Below, piece after piece: positions 14,165-57,995 of a DNA stretch of 64,000 bases. The DNA lies in assembly GCA_037447605.1 (NCBI GenBank), contig CM074809.1, positions 2,532,689 through 2,596,688 of the forward strand, in the 5' to 3' direction. Origin of the DNA: Zygnema circumcarinatum SAG 698-1b (taxonomy: Eukaryota > Plantae > Zygnematophyceae). Under the pieces are notes generated by a model. The model ran no database searches, was not told where the DNA came from, and worked only from the letters and a program-made list of their open reading frames with translations. Position 1 is the first letter of the stretch. Each line of letters starts with the position of its first letter. Position numbers and translations under genes: made by a program.

Positions 14165-14310
14165 GTGCTTAGGTCCTTATGTGACCAGCTCTTCGTGGTT
14201 CCCCATTGATTTCACGATGGGGAGGCCATCGAATGTACATGGACAAAACCAGCATGGGGAACCACGAGGGACTGGTCACAATGGACCCAGGGAAACCTAC
14301 GCCTAGGCTC
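14165..14310. mobile_element. Fold-back repeat family B, copy 1 (possible MITE-like element)
   Basis: ttaggtccttatgtgaccagctcttcgtggttccccat is inverted relative to atggggaaccacgagggactggtcacaatggacccagg. The core gatttcacgatggggaggccatcgaatgtacatggacaaaa matches copies at 25.9-26.1, 33.95, 42.17 and 57.7 kb. Confidence 0.6.
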
Positions 14311-24200: not shown

Positions 24201-25344
24201 AGACCCCATAAGACAAGCATTGAAACAGAACGCTAAATATTCAAGTAAAAGGGAAAGCTTCCACATGTCCAAAATTTTGGGGTCCTATCTAGACTCAGAA
24301 TTCTCCACTTTTAATCATATCATCTACTCCTCAAAGTGATAATGCAGCCTCTAAACAATTTAATAAAAAGAAACAATTGAGCTCTAGCATTCATGACAGC
24401 AGGTTAAAAGCTCTCTAGTAGGTATCTATGGTTGTGATTTGCACACCAAGACAAGAAACCATCCTTTCATTTAGAATAAGGACCTTTCTCCTTTTAATCA
24501 TATTTCTAAAAAATAATCTCGGCTAGAAAGGGAAGAAGATAAATTCAAAGAGCAACAATACACCTATATAAACAAACGGTTAATCTCCTCAAGACGTGCC
24601 TCTGTTGGCTTCCGCTAGATAGTACATGCCAAACTAAGTACGCCTCTCATTGTGCTCCATCACGAACAAGAGCCTGTTGTGACTAGAAAGGATTTAACTC
24701 CTTAAGCAAACCGACAGCCCGCCAAAACTTATCACTAAGTTTTCTTAGAACAAGCGAGAATGCCACTGCAATCCTCTGGGTGTGATTAAAAGTTACGGAA
24801 GCTGGCACAATTGCTTGGCACTAATTCGACATTCTCTCTTTATGCAAGGTCGTCGTTAGCAGTTAAAGACCCTTTAGCAGGTCTCAAACTTCAGAAGACG
24901 ACAGCACACAACTTTGAGCCACAGAAAATACAAAATACGCAACAGGCAACTCTGAGTTTCCAGCTTTTAATTTACACTTCGAAGAGACTCTCGTTTTCAA
25001 AGTACCTGTTTTGCAAGCATGCTGGCGTGTGCGCGGCTTCCCTGTAAATCAAACTTGTAAAGTTTTTTGTCGTATGAGACAGACTGGCCGAACTTCTCAA
25101 CTGCGGGAGTGACGGAATCTTCAAACCTCCCTCCCCACAGCTTGGCTTCCTTCGCATCCTTATCTGTTGCAACCGACATCATGGCTGTGCCAACGCTAGA
25201 AGCTGGAAATGCTGCTGACAGCGCGCCTGACGCCACGCCCCGACTGGAAGGAAGCGCTACACTGCGCAGAGTCCCTCGAGATGCGACTGTAGGAGCTCCC
25301 ACCGCTGCTGCCAGCTGCAAACACCCCCCGGGTCCTGCGGCCAT
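21208..25344 (-). CDS. ASL: Argininosuccinate lyase with probable plastid transit peptide (7 coding exons)
   Basis: [65 protein letters not shown] (fumarate lyase signature), [12 protein letters not shown]. Ala/Ser-rich N-terminus from ATG 25344. Confidence 0.97.
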
Positions 25345-25885
25345 GGCGCCACGTCCACGCTCCGCTAAGCAGCCTGACTCCTCTTCTCTCCCGCCTTTCC
25401 TCCCTCCCTCGTTCCCTCCCTCGTTCTCTCTCCCTCCTTCCCGCACAGACAGGCTTCTCCTCAGCAGCAGCAGCAGCTAGCCTGAAGTTTGAAGCGGAGG
25501 GCAAGCACAAGTCAGCTCGTCCCCAGGAGACGGTTGGATCTTTCGCACGCGCGAGAGGCCGTCGGTGCGGCGGCGGCGGCGGCGGCGGCGACTCGCCGGA
25601 TCCACCGCCACGCGGCGGGGCCCCGCGCGGGATCCACTGCCGGCCAATCGCTGCGGCCGGAGCGGACACGTGGCTTTCGCTTGGACTTGCGGCGCCGCCT
25701 TTTTTACACGCAAGGTGCCGTATGGTACGGGGGGGGGGGGGGTGCGAAGGCCGCCGGGAACACGACACGGCAGACTTGACTTGCGGAACATCGAACGGAA
25801 GGTTTCTTAGGGCATCGCCATCGTCAGATCAATGCCGCCACATCATTCTTCTTCAAGGATTCTTTCAATACGGAAAGGGAAAGAT

Positions 25886-26130
25886 GCGACCAGTTCCTCG
25901 TGGTTCCCCATGCTGATTTTGGCAATGTACATTTGATGGCCTCGCCATCGTGAGATCAATGCTATTTCCCCCTTCCCAAGAAAGGAAGTGGCATTGATCT
26001 CACGATGGCGATGCCATCAAATGTATACGGACAAAATTAGCATGGAGAACCACGACGAACCGGTCGCAAAGGTCCTAAGGACAAAACGAAAAAGCTATGA
26101 GCGAAAAGCTACGCCTAAGCTCAACAACGC
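25886..26130. mobile_element. Fold-back repeat family B: 77-bp inverted arms (25886-25962 / 25991-26067) with a 28-nt loop
   Basis: Reverse complement of the left arm, gcattgatctcacgatggcgaggccatcaaatgtacattgccaaaatcagcatggggaaccacgaggaactggtcgc, aligns without gaps to the right arm with about 10 mismatches. Confidence 0.75.
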
Positions 26131-26668
26131 AATTTCAACCGATTTCTTATACGGAGTACCGTACTTATTTGCAGGGGAAACGCGATGTCCTCGAAGTACA
26201 TACTCGTTTTGGCACCAGACTTGAGTCGCTTGATTTAAAACTCGCGATTACGGTATGGTCCCTGTCCTGCTCCACGGCCGAGTACCTACGCAGCGCGCGC
26301 TCAGAGCCTGCCCTGCCTCGTATCGACACACTCCCTGTGCATTAGATGGCGTGGCCATCGTGAGACCAATGCCGATGCCAATGCCAATGCCAATCCTCAT
26401 ACTTGCGTCCAACGGTTGGTTCATCGTGCGAGTGTCGTTTGGTATGACGCGACGTAGACACGTGTTACCTTCTGACTGTTGGATAGACTGCGAGCGAACG
26501 ACCGTTCGATATGCTACGTGGACACGCGCAATAATCGCACCGTTAGATTTCCACCTGCGGGAGCCGTTGGATAGGCCGTGTGGACTGGCGTTAGATGCTG
26601 GCCGTTGTATGCATGTGCGAAATTTGGTGAGGATGGCCGCTATTTGCCACGTGGACAGACCATCCGCG

Positions 26669-28131
26669 CTCTCTCTCTCTCTCCCTTTCCCCCCCTCTCA
26701 ATGGTTGCAACCACTGACTAGCTTCCCAGCCAACCATTGCAAGTAACTTCAACCACTGGACTATTGATTCCCGCTCCACCCAACCATTGCTAATGGTTGC
26801 AACCATTGGCTGGCTACCCAGCCAACCATTGCCAATAACTGCAACCATTGGACCATTGATTCCCGCCCCACCCAACCATTGGATCCAATGGTTGTAACCA
26901 TTGGCTGGCGTCCAGCCACCCATTGCCAATAAACGCAACCATTGGACCATTGATTCCCGCCCCACCCAACAATTGCCAATGGTGGCAACCATTGGCTCGA
27001 TATTCAGCCAACCATTGCCAATGTCTGCAACCATTGGACCATTGATTCCCGCCCCACCCAATGGTTGCAACTATTGGCTGGCTATCCAGCCAACCATTGC
27101 CAATAACTGCAACCGTTGGACCTTTGATTCCCGCCCCACCCAATCATTGCCAATGGTTGCAACCATTGGCTGGCTACCCAGCCAACCATGGCCAATAACC
27201 GCAACCATTCGACCATTGATTCCCGCCCCACCCAACCATTGGATCCAATGGTTGTAACCATTGGCGTGCTATCCAGCCAACCACTGCCAATGACTGCAAC
27301 CATTGGACCATTTATTCCCGCCCCACCCAACCATTCAATCCAATGGTTGGCTAGATCCGGAACCAACGGTTTGCAAATCGCGACCATTTCAATGGTTGAT
27401 CCAACCCATGGTCGTCCGCCCTGCCCTTGGCCCGGAATGTTTTCGGCTACCCTTCGCGGACGTCCGCGATTGGGCGTGCGTCGTCCGGGCAGCTGAAGGT
27501 TTAGTCCAGGGCAGCCCTACACTGTTTTCGGCTGCCATATCCTCGAAGCAAACGTCCGCGATTGGGCGAGCGTCGGCCGGGCAGCTCAAGTTTGGCGCCG
27601 GGCAGCATTCAAATGGTTATTTTGCCTTCCCCGCGAATGAATCGTCCGCGATTGGGCGAGCGGTGGCCGGGCAGCTGAAATTATTTCTGGTCCTCCGTCG
27701 CCGCGATTCCGATCAGGGGCAGCCCCCCTACGGCGCGTCCCGTCACGTCGCGCGCACCGTACGTCAGCATTCCCCCACGTCGGTGGCGCCACCTGTACGT
27801 CCGTACAGTCTGATCCACAGGGGAGATGAGGTAGGCGCGCGGCCGGCCATTTTGGGCCACCCCTTTGTCGTCCGGGCAGCTCGCTGCCAAACTTGAGCTG
27901 CCCTGCCGACGCTCGCCCAATCGCGGACGCTTGCTTCGCGTATGGGGCAGCCTGTAATAGGTTTGGTCTGCCCGGGTCCCTCCCCAAGCCCTCGCCCCGC
28001 GGCCCGGGCTGTCATGTCTTCCTTCCTCCCTCCCTCCCTCACCGACCACCCGCTCTCTCTCACTCTCTCGCTCACTCTCCCTCTCTCTCTTCTCTCTCTC
28101 TCTCTCTCTCTCTCGCTCTCTCTCTCCTCCT
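26669..28131 (+). mobile_element. Composite repeat element A, copy 1 (CT tract + palindromic 92-bp array + second 92-bp array + inverted unit + CT tract)
   Basis: Collinear and highly similar to 32066-33180. No transposase, TG..CA ends or TSD recognised. Confidence 0.65.
26696..27350. repeat. ~92-bp minisatellite, 7 units, made of overlapping palindromes
   Basis: Anchor gattcccgccccaccc (first copy gattcccgctccacc, last tattcccg) at 26766, 26858, 26952, 27044, 27126, 27218 and 27313. Contains CCAATGGTTGCAACCATTGG and CAACCATTGGATCCAATGGTTG palindromes and a TTGGCTGG-CTAC-CCAGCCAA hairpin. Confidence 0.92.
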
Positions 28132-28139
28132 GCCCATCC

Positions 28140-29124
28140 ATGGCCGTGCCAGGTGCTGCCAAGGCGGCAGCTTTCTGCTCCTTCTGGCTGCAGCTGTTGC
28201 AGCTGCTCGCAGCAGCGTTGGGCGGCGGGTTGAAGGCTGCTGCAGCCGCCCGCCCGCACCTGGAAGACCTTTGTCTCGTGTGGTGCACCGTCTCCTGGCA
28301 TGCGCTGGCTGCCATGGCGGTGCTTGGATACAGCGCTTGGGCGTGGCTGCTTGTGGGCGCCACGGAACTCGGAAAGGCCTACCTTTTCGCGGTGGACTGG
28401 TTGCACGAGGAGTTCGCAAAGGAGTTAGCGAATCCTCGTCGGGTATGACTTGCTGCACCTTTCAAATATTTCAAGCTTTTTGTTTTAAGGGTGGTTAGCA
28501 TCGGAAAGTGCTTTTTGCGTTTGTGCTGCTTGCTTTTGTATGGGCTAGTTTTGAAGGTTTGTATGCATACGCTTGACTGATTTGGCGTTTGCTGATATCT
28601 TGTTTGCAATACAGCTCCCCCAGACTGTGAAGACATATCCCATTGTGCGCGACTCGAAGAATTATTATGCCAAGTCCTCAGATTACCCGAACTTGAAGGC
28701 GCCGCTCTATGATGAGCCTGAGCCGCTATTCAGTGCGAGGCGGCCTCTGTTCCGCGACTCCTCGCCAGTTTTTAGTGCAAGCCAAAATGCATTCAGTGAG
28801 CCGCAGTACAGCCGCCGCCGCAATGGTCCCGGGGAAGGGAAAATGGGAGTGGGAAGAAATTTGCACAGCTCCTCTTCTTGGAAAAGGAAGCTGGGAAGCG
28901 ACCTCCAAGATTTGGTTACCATCCATGAAAGGCTGAACAGCGGTTGGGATATCGAGGCGAGCAATGCGGCCTTGGCGCGTGAATCGGCTCTTCTGCGCCA
29001 GTCACTGGCCCGCTTAGACAAAATGCTGCAAGTGAAGCCTCTCCATCCGATGTGGACTGATCCCAGAGGAGTGTTTTTGCCATCTGAGGATGGCCAGGGC
29101 TTCAAGTGTCCTCTGTGTCCTTGA
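28140..29124 (+). CDS. Two-exon hypothetical protein (~270 aa): hydrophobic N-terminus, coiled coil, ends GFKCPLCP
   Basis: Exon 1 28140-28442 (donor GTATGA) and exon 2 28615-29124 (acceptor tacag) join in phase 0. No family recognised. Confidence 0.7.
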
Positions 29125-29417
29125 TTGAGACAGGGTGTAAAAATAGAGTAGGAAGAAATAAGGCAATTTTTTTTTTGGTTGGAAAGAAGTGTGGCCCCCT
29201 ACAGCAGCATATCCTGCATGATGCATGGTTTTTGTTTCATATTGAAGCACAGCGTGACAATTGTCACGCTCTGTAGCGGTCCACAGTCCTTGAGTCCACA
29301 TAGCAGAATAACTGTGTCAGAAATTGTCAGTTGTAAATTTGTTGCCTTAAAAGGCTGTCCTTTTTGATGAAAAAAAGGTCTTTTTGATTGTATGACTCTC
29401 TCTGTACCTGTTTTTTG

Positions 29418-29427
29418 NNNNNNNNNN
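29418..29427. other. Assembly gap (10 N)
   Basis: Run of n in the sequence. Confidence 1.
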
Positions 29428-29863
29428 TTTGAAACATGGGCTTTTCAAGCTACATGGCCTGTTGGCAAGCGCATTGGTCTATTTGCATCATCACTGCACT
29501 GAGGTGATAGAAATGATTAGGAGTTGGTTGGCTGAATCGCCAGCACTTGTCTTTGTAACCTTGTCATCACCTTCTCTGACAATATTGCATCGAGAGTGAT
29601 TGTCCAGGTGGTGGGAGAGGGAGAGAGGGATGGAGGGGGGTGGGGAAGGGAAGGTCGCCCTCCACCGTGAAAACAGAATCAACAACTCTTGAAACAAATG
29701 TTTGCACTAGAACATAGAACTCCTCCCACACAGCCTACTTATGTTGGCCCCACCACTCAGTACCCAGTCATTCGAGGACTATAATCAGGTGCTCCATGAG
29801 CGTAAAAAATATCACTCCCCGTTAAGCATCACACCACTAGCCATACATATGTACATTGCGCCT

Positions 29864-31642
29864 TTACAGCCGCCTCAAGTTGTCCAGCCGAGCTTGCAAG
29901 TCGCTGTCTATGCCGTCGCCTTCAGGGGGCGGGCCTCCTCCCCCTCCCTGCTCCCGCCGGTTGAGCAACTTTGGCGGCTGTGGCCTGCACCTGGGGCTGG
30001 GCGGCAACCGCAGGAGCGTTCACAAGCTGCGGAAGGAGGGGCAAGGCAGAAAAATGTTTAAATTCCCGTCAGTAAGAGATTCAGGGGCTTGCTAATGGAG
30101 ATTATTGGCAGCATGGGAGACAGGCCGCATGCATCTGGAAGGAGGGTGGGGAGAAGGAAAAGTGGAATCCCAGGAATCCCTCTCTCTCTCTTCCTCCCTT
30201 CCCATCTCCCCCCCGCTTAGACTATATACAGACGAATGTGCCTTACCGCATCTACTGAACAGCAGCAACATGACCTTCTGCTTTACTAGACCATACATGT
30301 GGGTGAGTGCTTTCGATAATTAAGTGTATGTGCCTTTTATATAGAAGGAATGGTCTTTGCATTGGGAGAGAGTACGTGAATTTGAAGTCAATCCGAGTCT
30401 GCTGATGGACCTAACTGACCCAACTTTTTGCACTAACAACGGCATGAGCTGAATTCATGGGGACTCGCAGCAACTTCAACCAATGACATGGATCAGGTAA
30501 TTTGATCGAGCGTCCAACCCTTGAATTTTTATAACATATTGAGCAATTGACAAGATATCGTATTCCAAAGAAGAGAGCACGAACCTGCTGATCCAAATCA
30601 ATTCCAATTTCATCCAAAACTTGATTCACGAGCTCCTCCGTTTCCTCCTCTTCCTCGTCTCCTTCCAAGGCATCATCAATGGCATCCCCCATCATTTCCG
30701 AAGTCATTTCCATCTTCTCATTCTGACGCTCAAACTCCTGCATTATCTTTTGGAGCGCGGGCAGGTTGAGCTGCTTGTTCATTTGGCCCATGGCCTTCGT
30801 GACTCCCCTCATGGCTTCCGCCATGGCCTGTGTCGACTTCAGAGTCTGTACACAAACACAAAACTTTCAACAGCTGGCAGAACACGCCCTTCAAATGCAA
30901 AAACGTCTCATCAGGTTAGAGCTGATCCACTTCTAGTGCTTGCCTGAGAGGCTCAAGCTTTTGCTTTACCAAAATGCACCTAAAATGGATGTTGAGTATT
31001 GGATAAAAAGCTGCCTTCTTACCTGTATTCTTAATGAAATGCCCTGCAGCTGAGACTTCAGCGCATAAAACTTTGTTATTTGGTGCCTTGTTCGCCCTCA
31101 CAGCTCCCTGCAAGCCGGTCTCCCTGCCAGAGCATTAGTACGGAAAACACAGACGCCTTTACAGAGTCGAGTTTTCTGAGCAAACAGTGGGAGAAAAATA
31201 AGAATTTCGACGTAAGTTGAAACACAAAGTGGCAAAACTAGTCATGTTAAGTGCAGAACAACTATCCAACTAGGCAAGCGAATCGATTCTGCAGAAAGCA
31301 GGCGGCAAAACCGACCTCTATCCATTCGATAAAGAATAAATATTCACATGCATATTTTGCGTACACAGCATCGACATTTGACAATGAATGAATGCAAACA
31401 ATACGCTTCATTCAAAACTAAAAACGAAGGAAGGCATATAAATTAAGATGATGAACCCTGCACTTCGTCATGATGCACGCACGGCTGAACAAATGGCTCG
31501 AGGGAGCGACAGGAAAGCGAAAAGCCCACCATCTGCCCCTGCTTTGCAGTCTTCTTTATTTCTGCGATCAGTTTCTTCTCCTGTGCCTGCAGCTGCTGCC
31601 TCTCCCGCTCGATGTCCCGAATGGAGCGATCCAGCAGGAGCT
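29864..31642 (-). pseudogene. VPS2: VPS2.1/CHMP2-like ESCRT-III pseudogene (exon 1 missing, two deletions, one frameshift)
   Basis: Exons 31642-31530, 31107-31023 (85 nt; 105 expected), 30845-30585 and 30026-29864 (163 nt, not a multiple of 3). Conserved RENKRM and VMAKDLI segments are absent. TLKSTQAMAEAMRGVTKAM and IDSDLQARLDNLRRL* are intact. Confidence 0.85.
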
Positions 31643-31661
31643 CTGCAATAGCCACAGCCCA

Positions 31662-31850
31662 ACTCCACTTTTTGCCGATTTCTCCTCTTTGAACGCCGCC
31701 ATTGCAGAACGCAGCTCTAAGTTCGAGGAACACACGGAGGATGTAGGGAGGAGCCTGGAGCAGCTCGGAGAGCAGGCGGCGGTGGCCATGGCTGACCTTG
31801 AAGCGCATTACTATGCTTCACCTGACAGGGACTCTTCAGCAGACCAGCGG
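31662..31850 (+). pseudogene. MED22: C-terminal fragment of Mediator subunit 22
   Basis: LFADFSSLNAAIAERSSKFEEHTEDVGRSLEQLGEQAAVAMADLEAHYYAS matches, as I recall it, the plant MED22 C-terminus (IFSGFASLNDHVEQR..LKELESHYYSS). No N-terminal part or promoter upstream; VPS2 exon 2 begins about 20 bp away on the other strand. Confidence 0.7.
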
Positions 31851-32065
31851 ATAGTGCTAGCTCTCATGGATCGCAGTTCCTCATCCCTCGGTACAGCAGC
31901 TGCTGAACATCGTCTTCTTATCTTCTTGGCCTCAGCTTTTCCACACTGTTGCTTGTCACAGAGAAGGTTCCAAGCAGGGGTTTCAAAAGCAACCAGCAAG
32001 CCTCTACCTCTGTTCTCAGCACATTCTGTGAAATGGAAGCATGCCTCTATCAATGTCATTACCCC

Positions 32066-33180
32066 CTTTCTCCCTCTATCTCTCTCGCCCTCACTCTCTC
32101 ACCCCCTCCCTCACACTCCCTCTCCCCCTTTCCCTCTCTCCCTCTCTCCCTTTTTCCCCATCTCAATGGTAGCAACCATTGGCCGGCTACAAGTTAACCA
32201 TTGCCAATAACTGCAACCATTGGACCATTGATGCCCGCCCCACCCAATCATTGCCAATGGTTGCAGCCATTGCCAATAACTGCAACCATTCGACCATGGA
32301 CCATTGATTCCGTCCCCACCCAACCATTGGATCGGGAACCAACGGTTTGCAAATCGCGACCATTCCAATGGTTGATCCAACTCATGGTCCGTCCAGCCCT
32401 TGGCCCGGAATGTGTTCGGCTACCCTTCGCGGACGTCCGCGATTGGGCGAGCGTCGGCCGGGCAGCTGAATTCTGTCCACGGGCAGATTGGAAATGGTTT
32501 TGGCTGCCGCAACAGTGAAGCAAACGTCCGCGATTGGGCGTCTGTCGTCCGGGCAGCAGAAGGTTTGGTCCGGGGCAGCCCTAAACTGTTTTCGGCTGCC
32601 CAATCCTCCAAGCAAACGTCCGCAATTGGGTGAGCGTCGGTCGGGCAGCTCAAGTTTGGCTCCGGGCAGCATTCAAATGGTTTATTCTGCCCCACCAGCA
32701 AAAGTAATCGTCCGCGATTGGGCGAGCGGCGGCCGGGCAGCTGAAATTCTTTCTGGTCCTCCGTCGCCGCGATTCCGATCAGGGGCAGCCCCCCTACGGC
32801 GCGTCCCGTCTCGTAGCGCGCACCGTACGGCAGCATTCCCCCACGGCGGTGGTGCCACCTGTACGTCCGTACTGTCTGATCCACAGGGGAGATGAGGTAG
32901 GCGCGCGGCCGGCCATTTTGGGCCACCCCTTTGTCGTCCGGGCAGCTCGCTGCCAAACTTGAGCTGCCCGGCCGACGCTCGCCCAATCGCGGACGCTTGC
33001 TTCGCGTATGGGGCAGCCTGTAATAGGTTTGGGCTGCCCGGGTCCCTCCTCAAGGCCTCGCCCCGCGGCCCGGGCTGTCATGTCTCCCTCCCTCCCTCGC
33101 CGACCACCTGCTCTCTCTCGCTCTCTCTTCCTTTCCCCCCTCTCAATGGTTGTAACCATTAGCTGGCTTCCCAGCCAGCC
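32066..33180 (+). mobile_element. Composite repeat element A, copy 2
   Basis: Two palindromic units (32161-32335), four gtccgcgattgggcg units (32435, 32526, 32618, 32710), an inverted unit at ~32950-33005, a CT tract, then a restart of tctcaatggttgtaaccattagctggc. Confidence 0.65.
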
Positions 33181-33270
33181 GTGGGGAGGTGACGGGGGAG
33201 GTCACGGGAGGGGAGGGGGAGGGGAGGGGGAGGGGAGGGAAGGGGAGGGGAGGGGAGAGGACTGGAGGGG
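33181..33270 (+). repeat. G-rich (GGGGA)n tract, potential G-quadruplex
   Basis: gggaggggaggggaggggagggaaggggaggggagggg. Confidence 0.7.
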
Positions 33271-33929
33271 CGGGAAAGAAAATATTCAAAACAGGGGGGC
33301 TATCTCCACCCGAAATATCCAAAATGGGGGAGGGGGCAAAATAGCCAAAATGGGAAAGGGGCGGGATAACCAAAAAAGGGGGGGCGGTATATAGTTTTCC
33401 TATTTAAAAATCAGAGACCTTTTAAATCAGACCTATTTTTTTTTTTGGAGGAAGCTCAAGGACAAAGCCCCGACTGGAGGGACCCCCAAATTGTTGCCAC
33501 GTGGCGCGTTGTGGCTGCACGAGGGTAGCGTGTCGTTTTCGTAGGTGTCACGTAGGATAAGAGGCAATTGACCGTACTTCTTGGATAAGGTTTTTTTGTC
33601 GGATGCGGTGCTCACACGCGTGTGATATGACGTGGCAATGGACGGTCGTTGTAAAAAAAGTAAAAAGCTGGAATCCTGGCTTGCGTTGATTGGTCGGAAA
33701 CTTGTCGCGTACGCAAACGACATGTTTAACGTGTCTCTATCCATACGGTACGGTATCGCCGCACCGTACCGTGAAATTGTGAAGGCCGTCTGGATGGCGG
33801 CGCCCTCGGGAGGAAAGCCGCGCCACTAGCCTTTTGGGTTGGAAACGTGGTACAACTTGTTGGGAAACTCGCCATGCAATCTGTTTCATAGCCTGATCTT
33901 TCGTCTATGGGCCACTCGGTTTACATTGG

Positions 33930-34085
33930 GTCTCCATTTTGTCTTCGTCCATATATATTTGATGGCATCGCCATCGTGAGATTGATGCCAACTCATACAG
34001 GTTTTCACTGCACGAGAGAAGTGAATGGTCATCGGTCTTACAATGGCGAGGCCATCGAATGAATGTTTGTTCGTGGACAAAGGCC
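33930..34085. mobile_element. Fold-back repeat family B, degenerate inverted pair
   Basis: atttgatggcatcgccatcgtgagattgatgcc (minus-sense arm) followed by acaatggcgaggccatcgaatg (plus-sense arm). Confidence 0.55.
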
Positions 34086-34454
34086 ACACGCAGAATTTCG
34101 CCAAGTTTTTTTCTTGCAGTTAAGGCCCAACAACAACAACGACGCAGCCCTCGCGCCGCGGCGCTGTTCCGTGGCGCCGCGGAGCGCCGACGGTGTTTAT
34201 GCGCGCAGTTGGACGGTGTGGAGAACGGAGCAGGTGGCATGGAACGCGTGACGTGACGGCGCCTTCCTGCCTGCGGATTCCAGAAGCAGCAGGGATGGGC
34301 GGAAGGGGCGCGGTTCAGGGAAGGGAGGGGTTTGGCGCCATAGCCGTCGCTGCTCAAGCTTGCCCTCTCGTGCCACTGGAGCGGGACCGCCGCAGCCGCT
34401 ATAGCCGGGAAGGGACGCGACGTGAGAAGCGCTAAGTGAGCGACAGGCAGCGGT

Positions 34455-37400
34455 ATGGGAGGCGGCGGGCCAGCGGCTTCGGAGGTGGCGGCGGCGTCTG
34501 CAGGAGGAGGGCAGATGGAGGAGACAGGCTATGCTCGTGCAGAGGGGCCGGTAATGATGATGATGTCAAAGCGTCTGAGAGCGCTGCGGAAGAAGGCCAA
34601 TCGTATTTCGCAAATTGAGGAGTCGAAAGTGAGCGGGAAGGTGATCAACAAGGAGCAGGAGGAGATGTTGAGATCGAAGACTTCTGTGATGTTGCTCATT
34701 GACGAGTATGAGAAGCTGCGAACGCCGCTGCAGGCTTCTGTGAAAGAAGAGGTTGCTGAGGCTGAGAAGGTATTCCTCACGCAGGCTCTGCAGCAGAGGA
34801 GTACTGCTGCAGCGGCTGAAAGCGAGGGGAACGTGCAGGGAGAGCAGAAGGGGGAAGGGGAGGGCGTTGAAGAAAACGGGATTCCGCGTTCAGAAGCAGG
34901 CGGTGAAGCGGCTGACGGAAGGAAAGTGGAAGAGAGCAGAGAAGGATTGTCGGAAGTTTACGCTGCAGGGAATGCAGCGAGTGGAGGGAAAGGAATTGAT
35001 GGACTCGATCTTGTGAAGCTGATCGAAATGCTGTATTTTGGAGCTCTGTTTGACGTGAAGACGGCTGAAGGAAGCGGACATCCAGGAAGCGAAGCTGAAG
35101 TGCTTCGGTGGCGACGTGAACAGGAGCGGAATTCCTGTTTGTCGTATGATGTCGTTTCGGACGATGACGCAACACCGCCTCTGACTGAGCAGGATTTGGA
35201 TGCCATATCCATGCTCAGCCGACTGTTGACTTCTCGAAGCCCCAATGCTGGCAACCATAAGGAGGCAATTGAGCGTTGCCTGCAGCATGCCACGAAATGG
35301 TTGCAAGGAGTTGAGGAGCCAATTTCTGACAGCCTTCAATTGTCATGTAAGCATTGTCCCGCCATCCAGTGCTCACGTTTATATCTTGAACGTCGTGCAC
35401 CTTATCAAAACCCTCCAACGACAGATGTCAGGCCATGCATGGGGGGTTTCGTGAATACTTGCAACTATTAATGGACGGTGTTCCGTCACAAGGCACTTAC
35501 TGTAAATTATGTACGTTTGCAGCCTGTGAAACAATTGTGGTAAATTTCTCAGTGTCGTTGTTAGAATCGATTTTCCTTCCCAACTGGGATTCTACTCTGG
35601 TGGTTATGCAGGTGTTGACATGGTGGCTGATTGAATTTGATTCTGACAGATGAAGCCCGCTGACACAGAATAGCATGTCATTGGTCAAGAAGTCCGTTGT
35701 TGAAACTCTTTGGTCTTTGCGTAAATTCAGGGCGGATTTATTCAGCTTGACTACTTGGGCCTGAATTCAAGTTTTATCTTTACATGCACTTTTGCCAGTC
35801 CGCCATATTTAACTTCAAGCTCGCACTTTTCCGATTGTATTTTGTGGTAGTTTTACTCTTGTTTGTATTGAATTCTTTTTCTATTTGGTCAATTGAAGGT
35901 ACTTGACTCAAGAATTTGGTTCAACTGAGGTAGGCTCAGATATGTCCAATAGTTGTCACTGTCCTGATTTGGAAATCCTGATGCTGTTTTACTCTCAGCA
36001 GCAGCTTGTATCATATATGGTTGATATGTATGGCACATGAAGCGTAATTGCTTTACTCGACTGCTATTGCGGAAGCATTATCTGACAGCCTACGATACTA
36101 TATCTTTCTTGTTTTTTGCTCCATGTAATTGATAAGTTGTTCGAATTTCTGCATGACGTGCAGATGCACAGGTGAAGGACAGACTACGGCGCATTGTTTT
36201 GTCAGAATTTTTCACACGGAGTGTTTTGGACGTAAATGCCGAGGTAGCTGCAGCTGCAGCTGCATCAGGGCAGTTTGTCAGTGAAGCCTTGCCTGAGGTG
36301 CAGTCTACAGGGGTAAGTGGCCTGCCACGTTTGCCGGAGGCGGGGATGCTGGTGATTATGTCCTTGGATGCTTAATCAATTTTACAGGCTTCATTCTGTT
36401 ATTTGATTTAACTGCTATCATGTCTGTTTTGTTCATCATTTGGAAGGCCACGCCTAACATGATACGATCCCTATAGACGTATTGGTTAAAGTTGTAGTCC
36501 TTTTTATTGCCCGACTCAGCTAGCAATTTGTAATTTATGAGAGCTACTATTAGTATGCATCAATCGCTCTTAGTCCACTCATACCAGCTACTTGATTGGG
36601 GGTGGTGTTGGGTAGTGGGTTTGAACACTGTGGAAAGGAAACACTGCACTTGAGGAACATGACGCAATTGATTGTAGGAATTAAGTTGGCTGATTTCTGC
36701 TCAAGCTTCTTCGCCGCAGGACCAGGCAGGCGCACCTCAATATTACTCTGCGCCACCCTTCACTGAGTATGTTGTGGCTGGGCAAGACCATGGACTTCCA
36801 GAAGGAACCGCGGAGCACATGCTTGTGTCACCTGTTACAAACTTCGTGCCACAGGGTGGCTTTACTGTTGTGGATTCACAGGTACCTTCATTGACTTCTT
36901 AGACTTGTCTATTCTTTAGAGATTTCGAGTAGGTAGGCTCTCAGTCGGGTTAGTCTTAATCTTCCTTTTGCTCTGTTTCGTAGCATACCGTTTCTCGGTG
37001 TACATGCAACGATAGCATTATCTTATTTTTTCAAAATGCCGTGGAGCTATCCAGGATAAAGAGTTGCTCTTTTTAATTTGCAAATTGAAGGTTGTGTTTT
37101 CAAGACTGCCGTCCTTTTCATTCTTTTGTATAGGAAGTCCAATGTGACAAAAGCAATGCTTTCTGCTTCTTTGTGCATCATGCAGTCTAGATGCTTCTAC
37201 CAGTCCCTATAGCGAGCTGAGTGGTTAAGCTTTTGTCAAGTTTGAGTGCATAAATGGTGTAGTTCTTGTGAAGGTGTCGTCAGTGTTGCTGGAGGATATG
37301 TCTGCCCTGAATTTCGACCTGCTTCTGTTATGGTGCACTGCGTTTACCAGGTTCACCTTCAGTATCCCGGGCATGAGTCCATGAGTTCGAACATCTCAAC

Positions 37401-41352: not shown

Positions 41353-41442
41353 CGAAGCCGCCTACTCCCGCGCTTTCAGGTCTATGCTTAGCAAGGATAC
41401 CAAGGCTCAAGTAAAGGGTCAAGACGGGAGGTGGGGTAAGAA

Positions 41443-41496
41443 TTAGGGTTGAAGTTAGGGCCAGAATTAGGGTTGAAGTTAGGGCTAGAATTAGGG
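41443..41496 (+). repeat. Five TTAGGG motifs at exact 12-bp period (telo-box-like array)
   Basis: TTAGGG at 41443, 41455, 41467, 41479 and 41491, upstream of the RABF1 ATG in a probable 5'-UTR intron. Confidence 0.85.
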
Positions 41497-41705
41497 TTGA
41501 GCTCCGCTGAGAAGTTGCCTTACTAGAGAGGCTGCGCAGGAGGGAGGGCGCGGTCGGGGGGGGCACGTGGCGCTGCCTAGGCCCCCGCCAACCGCTGCGG
41601 CGAGTCCGAAACCGTCGACGGAAGGTTCCATGTGACGCTGTTCGCTTGTTCTCTGCCCTAAAGAACATATGCATGCATGCATGCATGCGTCGGTCCCGGC
41701 TTCGA

Positions 41706-41920
41706 AGCTTGCGCCGGTCGGACCATTGGATTGGTGTCGAACCATTGATTTGCGACCCAGCCAGCCATTGCCAATGGTCGGATACCATTGGATTCAATGG
41801 TTCCCAACCATTGCTCATTGTTCCAACCATTAGCGTCGGACCAAAACCATCGCCAATGGTTGCGAACCATTTGACGTCCAACCATTGCCATCCAATGGTT
41901 GCCGACCCAATGGTCGACTT
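41706..41920. repeat. Degenerate CCATTGG/CCAATGG array (family A relative)
   Basis: Repeated aaccattg / caatggtt units. Shares 29 identical nt with 50996-51024. Confidence 0.75.
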
Positions 41921-42159
41921 GTGAAAGCGTTTTTAGCCGCGCCATGTGACGTGATGCTGCCGCGGAATACGAACGGTTTGAAATGTGGTTCCAAGTTCAA
42001 CAAACCTCCGACCGCTTCGGGGGTGTGCAGCTTCGCCAGCTTGCTCGCTGCCCGCCTTGGCGTCAGCCGCCGGCGAGAGGTCATCGCGAGGGAGAGCAAT
42101 GCCCGTCCTGATGCCGTGAAAGAGAGTGGTGTATTACTGCTATTAGAGAAAGGGAGGTG

Positions 42160-42270
42160 CGGCATTGATCTCACGATGGCGATGGTGCCATCAAATGTAC
42201 ATTGAAAAAATCATGATGGGGAACCAAAAGGAACTGTCGTAAAGGACCCAAAGACAAAAAGAAAATTACC
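42160..42270 (+). mobile_element. Fold-back repeat family B, single arm
   Basis: gcattgatctcacgatggcgatggtgccatcaaatgtacattg..ggggaaccaaaaggaac..aaaggacccaaagacaaaa aligns to 25991-26090. Confidence 0.65.
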
Positions 42271-50580: not shown

Positions 50581-50949
50581 GCTGCCAAGAGTGTGTAGTA
50601 GCTGGATCCCAGCTCCAACACGAAGGAAAAGGAGTTTCTTTGCAGAAAAACGGCAGCACGTAGTCAAGTAGCGGCTAAGTTCCCCTACGGACGAAGCAGC
50701 CGCGCACGGCCGCCATGGCCTCCAGGAGGGCAGGGCGAGCCGCGGCGAATGCTCTGCCAGCATCGACCGAGCGGCGGCGGCGACCGTCCGCTCTCCTCTG
50801 CTACATGTAGGTGCAGTGAACTGTGCGCCGTTCCGTGAAAGAAAACTGCACCGCCACCATGTGGCGTGGCCGTACAGGCATGCATGCGTGTATGCATGGT
50901 GGTGTCACGGCCAGGTCGAACCATGCATGGGACTGTGGGCCGACTGCAA

Positions 50950-51065
50950 ACCAGCTGCCAACCATTCGAATGGTTCGGAAACGTGGCAATGGTTGGACGT
51001 CCAACCATTGCCATCCAATGGTTGTCCAATGGTTGTCCAATGGTTGCCGATCCAATGGTCCGACC
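50950..51065. repeat. Degenerate CCATTGG/CCAATGG array with (TCCAATGGTTG)3
   Basis: gacgtccaaccattgccatccaatggttg-tccaatggttg-tccaatggttg-ccgatccaatggtccgac; homologous to 41873-41918. Confidence 0.8.
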
Positions 51066-52844
51066 TGTGCAATTTGATTGTTTGAGGGGAGGTCGTTCAT
51101 GCAGGGATACAGTACCCCAAGCAGCTGGAGGGGGTCCAGCGACAGAAGTGCTGTGACTGTAACCAACCGTTGGCACTGCCCGGCAAACAATGGCAAAACA
51201 GACTATGTGAAGGCTTACTTATTGGATGGTTCGACCTGTGCATCGTGTACGTGTGCTGGCCGCGGCCCATGGTACTTGGACCGTCACCTTCTGGCATTCA
51301 GCAATTAATCATGGTCCCATGGAACCACATTGGTCCACGGGCCATAGGCTGTATGTGGCTCTCAGGCTTGGGCCGGCATGCGAGATGGGGGCATTCTTTT
51401 CGATTTTCCTTTTCCAGTTCTTTCTATTGTGTTCTGCTTGCATTTATTTCACTAACTTGCACTTACCTAGTCTCCACTTCACAACTTTCTTTTTTACTGA
51501 TTTCTTTATTCTTATCCAGGGCCTGTTAGGAGGAAAACTGGCTCATTTCACAGCACGAGTCCACCATGTGAAGAGTATGAGGCTCCTGATTGCACCTGAA
51601 CATTGCAAGCCGCCTCAGTATATAGAATCTATATGAAGCTCCAAACCGTTCAGTAAACAGACAGAACACAGATCCGTTTGCTGCAGGGACAAAATCGAAT
51701 AAGACAAGCCTGCCCTTCAGGCAGGGGACAAGGGACGGCTTCCCATCAAGAGCGCCCAAAAAAGAAAGGCACATATCCGGTGCAGGTCTGGGAAGCCTAA
51801 GGGGGCCATAATCAGACAACTTCGCAATTCCTTCCCTCCTCCATCACAACTGTTTCAAAGGAGGCCCATATTCTTGAAATGTCATTTCAAAAGGGAGCTC
51901 GCGATATCCACTTCGAATCCAAACCGGTCTTCAGACTAATGATGGAATCGTAGATGAGGGTCTAAATGCTTGTCCTGCACATGCATCACAACAATAATTG
52001 CTTTGTCAAAAAAAAACAGGAAGTAAAAGAGACAATCGCCAATCCCTGACTTTTTTTTAATCTGTAGCATGAACTTCAAAGCTGAACCAGAATGACTAGA
52101 AATTTTAGAAACCTGCACGAAATTGAATCGCAGTCAACATGGCACATCTCCTACAGCCATTGAACAGAACAATCAAAAAATAGCTTTCCTGGAGGAAAGT
52201 GGCCAAGTAGCACCACAAGCTTCCGTCGCACTATACTCACCTAAAGGATATCCTCTCCACCCTGCTGAAAGGTAGAAAGAAGTCCGGTAGAATTAGACAA
52301 TGGGGCATCACATAAAGAAAGAAGCAGCGTACCTCAAATTAGAGAAGATGCACCGATTGAAACAGACGGCAGCCTTCTTTTTGCGAACTTGGTGCGAGGT
52401 CACATGAGGCTATGCTTTTACAGGGCTTCTGCAAGATGTTGAATATGGAGAACGCCAAGGAAAATAAGGTTATTCATCTAAAATTGTACCGCCGGAGAAA
52501 GCTACTTGCTATTTGCAGTTTGCTGTTTGCTGCATCCACCATTCATGAAGTGTTGAGAGTTAAAGCGATACGAGCGGTTGCATCAGGACAGCTTGATCCC
52601 CGAATCACGTGTCTTAAAGGATGCTACGACTGCAGTCACTGAGAAGTTCCAAAGTGGCGCAAGTAGGCACGACTGAACTAGCTTTATGTCAGACCTTATA
52701 ATCTGTATATGTGCACTTTGTACAGCGGCGCGCCTTCGGGTAGTGTCTGCTTCTTCTGTCTGCATGTTAGGGTTGTCTTTGAATCAAGGGATACCCCATT
52801 GTTGATGTGGCCATTTGGACTATGTGTGCGTGCACACACATGCG

Positions 52845-55222: not shown

Positions 55223-57995
55223 ATGCTGTCTTTCGCAGCCATGATGCTTCCTCCACCAGTTCAGCACGGAGATAGAGTAAGCGTCGTTGCTCCAGCAGGA
55301 CCCGTCCAAGCCGACCTCCTGGCCTCTGGCATAGCCGTTCTGCAGAGCTGGTGAGGAATTGATTTGCCAATATCTTGCTCCAATTATTGCACCTTGATTT
55401 TAATTGCGTTTCTTATATAGCAGCTCGTGTTGCTTTCATCCCTGAAAAAGGTTCGAAAGAGTACCCGAACCTTGATACCCGTGCAGGGGGCTTCATCCAG
55501 TAGTCCATGAGCAGGTGCATCGCAAACAGGCTTATCTGGCAGGGCCTGATGAAGCGCGAACCAAGGCATTGGTGGAGGCCTTTACGGACCCCACAACGAC
55601 AGCTGTCATTTGTGCCAAGGGTGGATATGGCTGTACAAGGCTTCTTGTGCTGTTGGAGGAAGAGGAGTTGGATTGCCAAAATTTGTTGAAGAAACGATTT
55701 TTCGGCTTCAGTGATATTACGGCTCTTCACTGGTGGGAGGTCGGCATCAGAGAAAACCGTCCTAATTTGTGCTTCTGCTGATAGACTGAAATCCTTAAAG
55801 ATTTCCATCCAATTTGTGGATGCGGTTTAGGCAAACGTAAGAGAATTAATCTCCTGAGCGTTCTTGCATGGATCGAATTGTAATGCATGATATTTGTATC
55901 TATGAAGTACCCAGTTAAGTCCGTATAGACTGTCAGCAATAATTGTAGACAGACTTTCTGTCTTTCGTAAGTCACTAGCTATGCCTTCAGAGGAACATAC
56001 TGTCTCTTGGAGGCGTATCTTCCTGCTTGTTTACTCCTGTTTCCTTCAAGTGCTTGTCTTGATGTGCTAAGCAACCAGTGCAGAGGCGCCTTTCTTGAAC
56101 ACTGCATTCAAACTCCTAGCTTAAATTCCAGTAAAGCTGAACAGTTCGAATGTGAAATAGGAAAGTTGATCTAAGTTTTCCTTAGTAACAGCAGAATGTC
56201 TCTGCGTTCAGTTGGTTGCACAAAGTCCTGCCGGGGTACCATTCATTTCATTCGCCAATGCCTGCGACCTCACTGTTCACTGAGGGCAGCAAGGCGAGCA
56301 AGCTATCACTGCGTGCAGCACTCTTTGAGCCAGAGCTGAAGTTCGCCTGTCCTCCTTTGCAGGTACATGGCCATAAGCTTGTCTGTGATTTGCAATTATC
56401 CGTAAATTAAGCTTGAAGTGAAATGCCACATGTAAGTTGCTGTTTGTTCTTTCGCTGAGTCTACTGTCGATAGCTGAGAGGGACAGGTAGTTAGAGGTTT
56501 TCTTGGCAGATGCATTTGCTTCATTATCTGTGGCTCTCCCTGTAACACTTAACCACGAACTATGATTGAGTTGCAAACTGGCACCTTCGATCCGAGAATG
56601 CTTGCATGTATAACTTGTTGTATGGAAGGCATGGTATGATGTTTTTAGATGCGTGATGTAGCAAACCATTATGATTTGGATGTCTCAATTACCATAGTGA
56701 GACGTTGAGAAAGCATGCATATGTCTGCTTTTGGAAAGACGGCCTGCAAGACTGCAGGCTCGTCCGCTTTTCTCCTCCTATACTGCATTTGGGCGGCTAC
56801 TGTATGGAACGATGGAGCAAGCAAAATTTGAATAAGCGATTGTGTTTCCTAGTGTCCAAACATCCTTTCGATTCTCTGATCTTATTTCTCCACTAAGCTC
56901 AAGATGGATGAGCAGTTGATCTTGGCTAAAACTGCACCGAAAGCTTCGTGATCCTGGTGACAGCTCATTCTGAGCAGACAGATGGATGTTTCAACAACTC
57001 GCCGGAATTTGTGTAACGATTCTCTGGCACTGTATGGAGTAATGAGTATCGGGTTCTGTTGAATGCAGGGCCAATGCCTGCAGATGGGCCGCGCAGCAGA
57101 ACATGGCGGCATGGTGCGCGGCCGACTTGTCGGTGGAAACTTGTCATTGGTCGTCAGTTTGATCGGAACACCCTGGCAGATTGACCTGCAGGGCGCTATC
57201 TTGCTTCTGGAGGACGGTAGGACAGCTGCCATCTCCCAACCTCCTTTATGTGATAGTGGTTCTCCACGTTTATTAGTATGACCCAGTGTCTCGAGCAACC
57301 TGATTTTGAAGACTTGTGATTTATTCATAGGTTGCAGTTTCTGTTGTTGAGGTTGGCAGTAAATGAGGACATATATCGAGTGGACCGCATGTTCACACAG
57401 TTGGTCACTGCTTCTGGAGGAGTAGGAGCCTTGGCGCAGTGGGGCGGTCTTGCTCTCGGGGACTTCACTGGCATTGCCGCAGACTTGCAAGGTGAGAGTT
57501 GGGTACATGAAGTAAGCTGGCTGGGCTGCAGACTATGGTTCTTCCTATGGAGCATTCAGAGAGAGTATTTGAACTCAGTCCAAACCTTTCGCACAGGTTT
57601 CTAGGTTGTTCTTATGGCCGCATTGTTAGCCTAGAAGTAGAATTCCGCTCATAGGTTTTTTCTATTGTCTTTAGGTCCTTTTGTGGCCGGTTCCTCTTGG
57701 TTCCCCATGTTCACTTTGTTCATGTACGTTTGATGGCATCACCATCGCAAAATTCATTTCTCTTTAACAACTGTTGGCTTCTTTATTGTCGTCAGAAAAT
57801 ACGAAGGCTGCAATGCAGGATAATTGCGAGAGAGACCTGGAAAGGTGGTTCTGGCTCTCTCAAATGCGGCTTCCTCCAAGCCTACCAGTGATTTCAGGTT
57901 TGCCTATCGGACACATAAAGGACAACAGGGTGGTGCCCATAGGCGCCGTGGTAGAAATGGATCTCAATTCCGGCACATTGCAAGCTGCATTATAA
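55223..57995 (+). CDS. Peptidase S66 family LD-carboxypeptidase (LdcA/MccF-like), 6 exons
   Basis: Exons 55223-55350, 55487-55732, 56212-56362, 57069-57216, 57360-57491 and 57796-57995 are all phase-compatible. GDRVSVVAPAG, AKGGYG, GFSDIT (Ser), GGNL, LLLEDVNE (Glu), LPIGH (His). Start uncertain (55223, 55241, or an upstream exon from 55051). Confidence 0.92.
57635..57755 (-). mobile_element. Fold-back repeat family B, single arm inside S66 intron 5
   Basis: Reverse complement gcgatggtgatgccatcaaacgtacatgaacaaagtgaacatggggaaccaagaggaaccggccacaaaaggacctaaagac aligns to 26001-26090. Confidence 0.65.

What the first reader, a model, noticed from the sequence alone, without database searches (positions are those of the whole stretch)
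26696..27350. 92-bp minisatellite built from nested palindromes and dense CCAAT/ATTGG sites
Seen: 7 units (spacings 92, 94, 92, 82, 92, 95) containing a perfect 20-bp palindrome CCAATGGTTGCAACCATTGG, a 22-bp palindrome CAACCATTGGATCCAATGGTTG, an 8-bp-stem hairpin and a GC-box-like CCCGCCCC. Known: CCAAT is the NF-Y core; non-autonomous Helentron/DINE-type elements carry internal tandem arrays and microsatellites. Inference: either a multivalent protein-binding platform or the tandem core of an undescribed TE family.
Basis: partly seen in the sequence, partly recalled or inferred. Interest (0 to 1): 0.75.

Follow-up and report, generated by a model that had tools for sequence, protein, structure and literature searches.

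The report
CCAAT-word minisatellite inside a repeated promoter-side cassette
The 92-base repeat is real, but it is the variable-length front part of a 1.0-1.5 kb non-coding cassette copied to several gene-start regions of this land-plant-related alga; that is an ordinary kind of repeat whose possible role as a movable promoter piece is untested.

Summary
Observation confirmed. At 26699-27349 there are 7 units of about 92 bp (TRF score 870) with exactly the reported spacings and all four named sub-features.

The array is not a stand-alone element. It is module 1 of a composite non-coding cassette present twice in direct orientation: copy A about 26650-28130 and copy B about 32054-33180. The module order is CT tract, array 1, linker, an unrelated second 92-bp array, an ACGT-rich unique part, an inverted array-2 unit, a GC-rich tail and a CT tract. 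Non-array parts are 93-97% identical. Homology stops at the cassette edges. Array 1 has 7 units in A and about 2 in B.

The 9-mer AACCATTGG (26 copies against 0.5 expected) occurs only in these two copies and in two degenerate promoter-side clusters at 41.8 and 51.0 kb. Motif columns are no better conserved than spacers, so the words look inherited by amplification and not individually selected.

Apart from array 1, the cassette is CpG-island-like. In copy A it runs through a CT leader into a gene's ATG.

Helentron/HINE, LTR and TIR-transposon tests fail or are inconclusive.

Unverified scan notes describe what seem to be the same arrays at other loci and on other pieces of this genome. Low to moderate interest.

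The parts
26650..26698 (+). Copy A, left edge: short piece resembling the cassette tail (GACCA-CCGC) followed by a CT-rich tract
   Evidence: 26658-26735 is 84% identical to 33102-33180; alignment A2
26699..27349 (+). Copy A, array 1: the reported 92-bp minisatellite, 7 units, with a 4-unit higher-order duplication
   Evidence: TRF; the repeat finder; unit alignment (units 26792 and 27152 are 96% identical)
27350..27459 (+). Copy A, linker; holds CCAACGGTT and CAATGGTTG words and the 16-bp palindrome TCGCGGACGTCCGCGA at its 3' end
   Evidence: 94-95% identical to 32330-32470 (D9/D10); palindrome
27460..27682 (+). Copy A, array 2: about 2.5-3 units of an unrelated 92-bp repeat (conserved ~37-bp head with CCAATCG in reverse, variable hairpin-bearing spacer)
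   Evidence: no homology to array 1
27683..27875 (+). Copy A, unique GC-rich, ACGT-core-rich segment (CCACGTC, TGACGTA); CpG o/e 1.2
   Evidence: 97% identical to copy B (D3); CpG profile
27876..27979 (-). Copy A, inverted array-2 unit closing a long inverted repeat with 27506-27606
   Evidence: the repeat finder I3; DNA fold z = -9.6
27980..28130 (+). Copy A, GC-rich tail (CCGCGG/GCCCGGGC palindromes) and a CT microsatellite that ends 12 bases before an ATG
28143..28443 (+). Context: first exon-like ORF of the downstream gene, ending at a GTATGA donor-like site
   Evidence: translation; no Pfam family
32054..32163 (+). Copy B, left edge: tail-like TGTCAT piece and a CT-rich tract
32164..32333 (+). 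Copy B, array 1: about 2 units (the second has a 23-nt deletion and a 7-nt insertion)
32334..33131 (+). Copy B, linker, array 2 (3.4-4 units, 32433-32745), unique segment, inverted unit (32942-33045), tail and CT tract
   Evidence: one whole extra array-2 unit relative to A
33132..33180 (+). Copy B, restart of array 1 (a partial next cassette), broken off into a (GGGGA)n tract
   Evidence: 86% identical to 26687-26735 (D5); alignments
41700..41925 (.). Degenerate, non-periodic cluster of the same CCAATGGTTG/CAACCATTG words
   Evidence: weak BLAST hit to array 1
50940..51070 (.). Second degenerate cluster: (TCCAATGGTTG)x3 and a 30-bp perfect palindrome of the same word, about 200-300 bp upstream of a minus-strand ATG at 50763
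   Evidence: identical 30-nt block shared with the 41.8-kb cluster

Best explanation
The 92-bp array is the variable-length upstream module of a 1.0-1.5 kb non-coding composite repeat (a 'cassette') that has been copied into several intergenic regions next to gene starts in this streptophyte alga. Each unit is a ~58-nt imperfect foldback plus a tail, built from the 10-nt word CAACCATTGG, which contains a CCAAT box on the other strand. The array grows and shrinks by unequal exchange or replication slippage. The many CCAAT words are there because one unit was amplified, not because each site is kept by selection. The cassette as a whole has the composition and layout of a CpG-island promoter. 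Its most likely effect is therefore to supply upstream and leader sequence to the adjacent gene, including a dose-variable block of CCAAT-type sites for NF-Y-like factors. Shown: the array, the cassette, its copies, the copy-number differences, the composition and the position. Inferred: how the cassette spreads (no transposon hallmarks found), promoter activity, and which protein binds.
For: - Array and spacings.
- Two cassette copies with the same module order, 92.6% identical over 612 nt and 94-97% in sub-blocks; homology ends at the cassette edges and the flanks are unrelated.
- Unit number differs between copies (array 1: 7 vs about 2; array 2: about 3 vs about 4), and one indel equals exactly one array-2 unit.
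- Four-unit higher-order duplication inside array 1.
- AACCATTGG occurs 26 times against 0.5 expected, all inside A, B and two degenerate clusters.
- Motif columns are not more conserved than spacers (0.086 vs 0.078 changes per site, p = 0.77).
- Not coding: the period is not a multiple of 3, there are no Pfam hits, the array translation has no relatives, and 10 of about 12 A/B differences in the longest shared ORF are non-conservative replacements.
- No Rfam family in the array.
- Linker, array 2, unique part and inverted unit have CpG o/e 0.9-1.26 at GC 57-67%, against a window mean of 0.71.
- Copy A lies between a minus-strand argininosuccinate-lyase-like first exon (ATG about 25344) and a plus-strand ORF whose ATG (28143) follows the cassette's CT tract.
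- Copy B lies between a Snf7/VPS2-type gene on the minus strand and a plus-strand gene with plant homologues.
- There are 23 CCAAT[C/G][A/G] sites in A and 10 in B.
Against: - Only two full copies could be examined. Both lie within 6.5 kb in the same orientation, so plain local duplication is not excluded.
- No terminal inverted repeats, target-site duplications, subterminal repeats or Helitron-type ends were found. The edges fall in CT-rich low-complexity DNA and cannot be placed to the base.
- Dispersal to other chromosomes rests on unverified first-reader notes.
- Promoter activity and protein binding are untested. Copy B is 1.27 kb from the next ATG and not adjacent to it.
- The selection test has low power (7 units).
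Confidence: 0.5

Rival explanations
1. Purely local duplication: a promoter-and-leader piece was copied nearby by unequal crossing-over or replication-template switching at the CT microsatellites. There is no mobility of any kind, and the array is a by-product minisatellite.
For: - Both copies are within 6.5 kb in direct orientation.
- Each is followed by a 5' fragment of a further copy (28010-28130; 33078-33180), and the edges lie in CT microsatellites.
- More copies are reported only 5 kb beyond the window end (note s1-378364).
- No transposon hallmarks were found.
- A follow-up note on another piece (s1-555068) concluded local copying of a promoter-leader piece.
Against: - Notes s1-368047 and s1-400700 describe 92/95-bp palindrome-stacked minisatellites on other pieces of the genome.
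- The degenerate word clusters at 41.8 and 51.0 kb have unrelated flanks.
- The genes flanking the copies are not duplicated.
Confidence: 0.2
2. A host cis-regulatory platform: a homotypic cluster of CCAAT-type sites that arose in place and is kept by selection to recruit many copies of NF-Y or another factor recognising CAACCATTGG.
For: - There are 17 CCAATGG and 4 CCAATCG sites in copy A, and all four word clusters are in intergenic DNA near gene starts.
- CCAAT-based modules are reported as common promoter parts in this genome.
- The neighbourhood is CpG-island-like.
Against: - Motif columns change as fast as spacers.
- Copy number is 7 vs 2 between otherwise 93-97% identical cassettes.
- The 9-mer is absent from every other promoter in the window.
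- Outside the four clusters, CCAAT[C/G][A/G] is at chance level: 37 against about 43 expected for the whole window.
- The genome's usual CCAAT-N9-CCACG module is absent from the cassette.
Confidence: 0.13
3. A non-autonomous rolling-circle element of the Helitron/Helentron (HINE/DINE-1) type, whose central repeats are arrays 1 and 2.
For: The layout matches the published HINE scheme: microsatellite, then one or exceptionally two consecutive unrelated arrays, then a right flank with short palindromes; whole elements are sometimes in tandem with truncated copies (PMC4067079, PMC7492417). Here there is a CT tract, two arrays, GCCCGGGC/CCGCGG palindromes in the tail, and partial restarts after both copies.
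Against: - No inverted 11-mer (up to 1 mismatch) links any candidate left flank to the right flank in A or B.
- The candidate boundaries show no T runs or TT.
- No Rep/helicase ORF was recognised in the window (Pfam).
- The published HINE examples are from animals.
Confidence: 0.1

Closest known systems
Short satellite-like arrays carried as 'central repeats' of non-autonomous Helentrons (HINE, DINE-1/DINE-TR1; oyster Cg_HINE) - PMC4067079, PMC7492417
   Same: A dispersed non-coding element made of a flank with a microsatellite and a short tandem array of 2-9 monomers. Occasionally there are two consecutive arrays of unrelated monomers. Array orientation is fixed relative to the flanks, copy number varies between copies, elements lie near genes, and elements occur in tandem with truncated copies.
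   Different: No subterminal inverted repeats, no TT/T-run boundaries and no identified Rep/Hel partner. The monomer is 92 bp, not 140-180 bp. The lineage is a streptophyte alga. The rest of the element is CpG-island-like and ends in a CT leader abutting an ATG.
Tandem 'monomer' promoters of mouse L1Md retrotransposons (PMC6454616, abstract seen)
   Same: A repeat family whose upstream part is a tandem array of promoter-type units with variable number between copies.
   Different: L1Md is an autonomous LINE with ORFs and ~200-bp monomers. Here nothing is encoded and promoter activity is only inferred.
Promoter minisatellites and tandem repeats at plant gene 5' ends (for example the FWA and SDC promoter repeats of Arabidopsis; recalled from memory, not checked here)
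   Same: Tandem repeats lying directly upstream of a gene, some of them transposon-derived, with the potential to modulate its expression.
   Different: Those act as targets of siRNA-directed methylation. No methylation or small-RNA data are available here, and the cassette's CpG content argues against long-term methylation outside array 1.
Genome-wide CCAAT-N9-CCACG(T) promoter module of this same genome (scan notes)
   Same: CCAAT-containing words, promoter-side location, and partly carried by repeats.
   Different: A different word and geometry: the cassette holds no CCAAT-N9-CCACG, and the window holds a single match at 13944. The CAACCATTGG word is confined to four clusters and is not scattered over promoters.

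Membership tests
Minisatellite (tandem repeat with a unit of tens of bases) | Head-to-tail copies of a 10-100 bp unit, above chance | tested here: met
   TRF: period 92, 7.0 copies, 84% matches, score 870; spacings
Helentron-associated interspersed element (HINE/DINE-1) | Central tandem repeats preceded by a microsatellite in the left flank | tested here: met
   A CT tract lies directly before array 1 at all three junctions; two consecutive arrays
Helentron-associated interspersed element (HINE/DINE-1) | 12-15 bp subterminal inverted repeats near both ends (PMC4067079) | tested here: not met
   No inverted 11-mer with up to 1 mismatch between candidate left flanks and the right flank, in A or B. 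Caveat: the termini are not defined to the base.
Helentron-associated interspersed element (HINE/DINE-1) | Short palindrome 8-35 bp from the 3' terminus | tested here: inconclusive
   CCGCGG and GCCCGGGC lie in the tail (27990-28009; 33056-33075), but the 3' terminus is unknown
Helentron-associated interspersed element (HINE/DINE-1) | Insertion at TT with T runs at the boundaries; autonomous Rep/Hel/endonuclease partner sharing the ends | tested here: inconclusive
   No T runs at any candidate boundary. No such ORF was recognised in the window. The partner search needs the whole genome.
LTR retrotransposon (cassettes as LTRs) | Direct terminal repeats enclosing gag/pol or a non-genic interior, with TG..CA ends, PBS and PPT | tested here: not met
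   The interior 28143-32050 holds an intron-containing Snf7/VPS2-type host gene and no gag/pol. No TG..CA ends or PBS-like TGG were seen at the edges.
TIR DNA transposon / MITE | Terminal inverted repeats at the element ends and a target-site duplication | tested here: not met
   The only long inverted repeats are internal (array-2 unit against its inverted copy). No matching flanks at any candidate edge.
NF-Y-type CCAAT-box cluster | CCAAT pentamer with permissive 3' flank (C/G then A/G; consensus recalled from the literature) | tested here: met
   23 such sites in copy A and 10 in B
NF-Y-type CCAAT-box cluster | Core better conserved than the surrounding sequence; factor occupancy | tested here: not met
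   CCAAT columns 0.067 vs other columns 0.083 changes per site, p = 0.70; ACCATTG columns 0.086 vs 0.078, p = 0.77. Occupancy is not testable with these tools.

The most novel reading that the evidence does not exclude
The cassette is a self-spreading promoter: a non-coding mobile unit that delivers a complete CpG-island promoter with leader to host genes. Its two unrelated upstream arrays are both held at a 92-bp period by a structural constraint (for example half a nucleosome repeat, or a fixed template-switch length), so that array length tunes expression of the gene it lands in front of.
Probability: 0.12. Interest if true: 0.65.

Novelty: new member of a known kind. Interest (0 to 1): 0.3.

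Why it matters
If the cassette family really is dispersed and supplies working promoters, it would be a clear case in a close algal relative of land plants of repeats spreading ready-made regulatory DNA, with a built-in, length-variable block of CCAAT sites. That is relevant to how promoter architecture diversified before land plants arose. As it stands, it is a well-defined but ordinary specimen of a minisatellite embedded in a larger non-coding repeat. It is useful mainly for repeat annotation of this genome, and as a caution that dense 'binding-site' arrays can arise by simple amplification.

Tried and rejected
- Metagenome scan for the 20-bp palindrome: 4 contigs, all isolated chance palindromes in AT-rich unrelated DNA with no array.
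- Searching the array's longest translated ORF against the 5.8-billion-protein collection, to recover spurious ORFs over related arrays: nothing.
- Literature search for the motif strings: only primer sequences.
- Rfam scan of 25000-34500: only sub-threshold miRNA-like hits, outside the array or in low-complexity DNA.
- Coding hypothesis rejected.
- LTR hypothesis rejected because the interior holds host genes.
- A suspected third ~90-bp array just upstream (26380-26662) did not hold up: 49% column identity.
- Cryptic homology between arrays 1 and 2: none.
- Organism identification: the best protein hit was Mesotaenium endlicherianum at 46%, so the source genome is not in the protein collection. 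Genome-wide copy counts, empty sites and orthologous promoters could therefore not be examined.

Full report

Yes. Tandem Repeats Finder reports an array at 26699-27335 with period 92, 7.0 copies, 84% matches and score 870.

Exact searches confirm each named sub-feature, with some corrections:
- The 20-bp palindrome occurs once (27150) and is really 22 bp long (27149-27170).
- The 22-bp palindrome with a central GGATCC occurs twice (26873, 27233).
- The perfect 8-bp-stem hairpin occurs in three units.
- CCCGCCCC occurs in six of the seven units.

The word CAACCATTGG occurs 24 times in the window against 0.15 expected. The window has 22 perfect palindromes of 14 bp or more against 4.3 in shuffles. 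Two units fold as single-stranded DNA with z = -5.4. Each unit carries six ACCATTG cores, five direct and one inverted. Its first ~58 nt form an imperfect foldback.

**2. What the array belongs to**

The array is one module of a larger composite repeat that is present twice in the window in direct orientation. The order in both copies is:
- a CT-rich tract
- array 1, the reported repeat
- a ~100-nt linker
- array 2, a second 92-bp repeat with a conserved ~37-nt head containing CCAATCG in reverse and a variable, hairpin-bearing remainder
- a ~190-nt GC-rich unique segment full of ACGT cores
- one inverted array-2 unit
- a GC-rich tail
- a second CT tract

Copy A spans about 26650-28130 and copy B about 32054-33180. 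Outside the arrays the copies are 92.6% identical over 612 nt and 94-97% identical in sub-blocks. Homology ends at the cassette edges, and nothing else between or beyond the copies is duplicated.

The copies differ mainly in unit number:
- Array 1 has 7 units in A and about 2 in B.
- Array 2 has one whole extra unit in B.

Within array 1 of copy A, units 2 and 6 are 96% identical. Units 3 and 7 share the GGATCC junction and a TGTAACC variant. This shows a recent four-unit (~360-bp) higher-order duplication.

Both copies are followed by the beginning of a further cassette:
- In B the tail runs on into 49 nt of array 1 and then breaks into a (GGGGA)n tract.
- In A the tail and CT tract recur and then give way to an ATG.

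**3. Surroundings**

The best protein match for a flanking gene is Mesotaenium endlicherianum at 46%, followed by ferns and bryophytes. The genome is therefore a streptophyte (charophyte-grade) alga that is not itself in the protein collection.

- Copy A lies in a 2.8-kb head-to-head intergenic region. On the minus strand is an argininosuccinate-lyase-like first exon (hallmark KLWGGRF, ATG about 25344). On the plus strand is an ORF whose ATG at 28143 follows the cassette's CT tract by 12 bases and whose first exon ends at a donor-like GTATGA.
- Copy B lies between a Snf7/VPS2-type gene on the minus strand and a plus-strand gene starting at 34455 that has plant homologues. Copy B is 1.27 kb from that ATG.
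- The DNA between the copies holds intron-containing host genes, which rules out the idea that the copies are LTRs of one retroelement.

**4. Is the word a general cis-element or a family marker?**

The heptamer ACCATTG occurs 60 times against 8 expected. The 9-mer AACCATTGG occurs 26 times against 0.5 expected. All 26 lie in copy A (16), copy B (5) and two other places, 41.7-41.9 kb (2) and 50.95-51.06 kb (3).

Those two places are non-periodic, degenerate clusters of the same words. They share an identical 30-nt block and a CATGCATG tract with each other. The 51.0-kb cluster contains a 30-bp perfect palindrome made of the word and lies 200-300 bp upstream of a minus-strand ATG.

Outside the four clusters, CCAAT[C/G][A/G] is at chance level: 37 sites against about 43 expected for the whole window. 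The genome's widely noted CCAAT-N9-CCACG module is absent from the cassette. The word therefore behaves as the signature of a repeat family and not as a site scattered over promoters.

**5. Selection on the sites?**

In the seven-unit alignment, columns inside the ACCATTG cores change at 0.086 per site against 0.078 elsewhere (Fisher p = 0.77). CCAAT columns change at 0.067 against 0.083 (p = 0.70). Power is low, but there is no sign that the sites have been protected since amplification. The best-conserved block is GATTCCCGCCCCACCC, not a CCAAT word.

**6. Not coding, not a known RNA**

- The period is not a multiple of three.
- The module's ORFs hit no Pfam family.
- The array's translation has no relatives among 5.8 billion proteins.
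- In the longest ORF shared by A and B, 10 of about 12 nucleotide differences are non-conservative replacements.
- Rfam gives nothing in the array.

**7. Composition**

Array 1 is CpG-poor (o/e 0.37-0.41) with a TpG/CpA excess (1.71). This follows from the word itself. The linker, array 2, unique part and inverted unit have CpG o/e 0.9-1.26 at 57-67% GC. That resembles the neighbouring promoter DNA (1.16-1.37) and is unlike gene bodies here (0.1-0.9; window mean 0.71).

This is the signature of unmethylated promoter-type DNA, or of a young repeat, and not of a long-silenced transposon. Together with the ACGT cores, the CCAATCG boxes and the CT-rich leader that reaches an ATG in copy A, it makes a promoter-donating role the most likely effect. 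That role is inference only.

**8. Transposon tests**

Published HINE/Helentron criteria (PMC4067079 and PMC7492417) are:
- a left flank with a subTIR, an inverted repeat and a microsatellite
- central repeats, exceptionally two consecutive unrelated arrays
- a right flank with a subTIR and a short palindrome
- TT target sites
- occasional tandem elements with truncated copies

The gross layout matches well. However, no inverted 11-mer (up to 1 mismatch) joins any candidate left flank to the right flank in either copy. No T runs mark the boundaries. No Rep/helicase ORF is recognisable in the window.

No terminal inverted repeats or target-site duplications were seen either. The only long inverted repeat is internal: an array-2 unit against its inverted copy, fold z = -9.6. 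Because the edges fall in CT-rich low-complexity DNA they cannot be set to the base, so these negatives are not final.

**9. Elsewhere in the genome and in public data**

Public data gave nothing. The metagenome scan found four chance palindromes, and the literature search by motif found only primers.

Notes from this scan are all unverified first readings that I could not test:
- A ~1.2-kb composite module in tandem at two loci abutting gene 5' ends, and a 37-bp-repeat/54-bp-spacer array (37 + 54 = 91, matching array 2), both about 5 kb beyond this window's end.
- A 92/95-bp palindrome-stacked minisatellite with a 374-bp higher-order repeat on another piece.
- A nested-palindrome minisatellite between two divergent genes on another piece.

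If these are correct, the family is dispersed and the four-unit higher-order structure predates dispersal.

**10. Verdict**

This is a real minisatellite, but it is the expandable part of an unclassified non-coding cassette that sits at gene starts. The dense CCAAT/ATTGG sites are explained by amplification of one foldback unit.

The protein-platform reading stays possible but gains nothing from the sequence.

Two things remain unexplained. First, two unrelated arrays share a 92-bp period with no detectable homology. Second, the word CCAATGGTTG may have derived, by one C-to-T change at a CpG, from the MYB/MSA-type word CCAACGGTTG. That word survives in the linker (27362-27372), in the upstream flank (26408) and once in the array (27111).

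Nothing here concerns a pathogen, toxin or human DNA.

Noticed in passing
window 14204-14289, 25885-26068, 26311-26372, 33927-33990, 42147-42265, 57620-57753: A separate ~185-bp hairpin MITE-like family (85-nt arms, 87% complementary, 14-nt loop at 25885-26068). Copies or fragments lie near three of the four CCAAT-word clusters, possibly only because both prefer intergenic DNA.
   Followed up: partly
window 27460-27682 and 32433-32745: Array 2 has the same 92-bp period as array 1 but no detectable homology to it (alignment score within the shuffle null). The shared period is unexplained.
   Followed up: partly
window 26408-26418, 27362-27372, 27111-27121: CCAACGGTTG / CAACCGTTGG variants (MYB/MSA-type AACGG core) differ from the array word by a single C-to-T change at a CpG. 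The array word may descend from them by deamination before amplification.
   Followed up: no
window 50984-51013: A 30-bp perfect palindrome (two CAATGGTTGG words facing across ACGT), next to (TCCAATGGTTG)x3, about 200-300 bp upstream of a minus-strand ATG at 50763.
   Followed up: partly
window 41439-41500: A 24-bp tandem repeat (2.6 copies, 97% matches) containing TTAGGGTT, which is telomere-repeat or telo-box-like, about 220 bp before the 41.8-kb word cluster.
   Followed up: no
window 26400-26650: The stretch just upstream of copy A is rich in CNGTT(A/G) MYB-type cores and holds two ACGTGGACA boxes. It is not a clean tandem repeat (49% column identity).
   Followed up: partly
window 29251-29270: An isolated 20-bp perfect palindrome AGCGTGACAATTGTCACGCT between the two cassette copies.
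   Followed up: no
window 33183-33375: Right after copy B's truncated restart there is a (GGGGA)n tract, then 2.5 copies of a 25-bp AAAATGG-containing repeat, ending near a TATATAG. This may be another repeat inserted at the break.
   Followed up: no
window 30135-30214 (minus strand): A hairpin scoring 33.6 bits against Rfam mir-877 (gathering score 47, E = 0.0013). It is below threshold and lies in the gene region between the copies, so it is probably chance.
   Followed up: no
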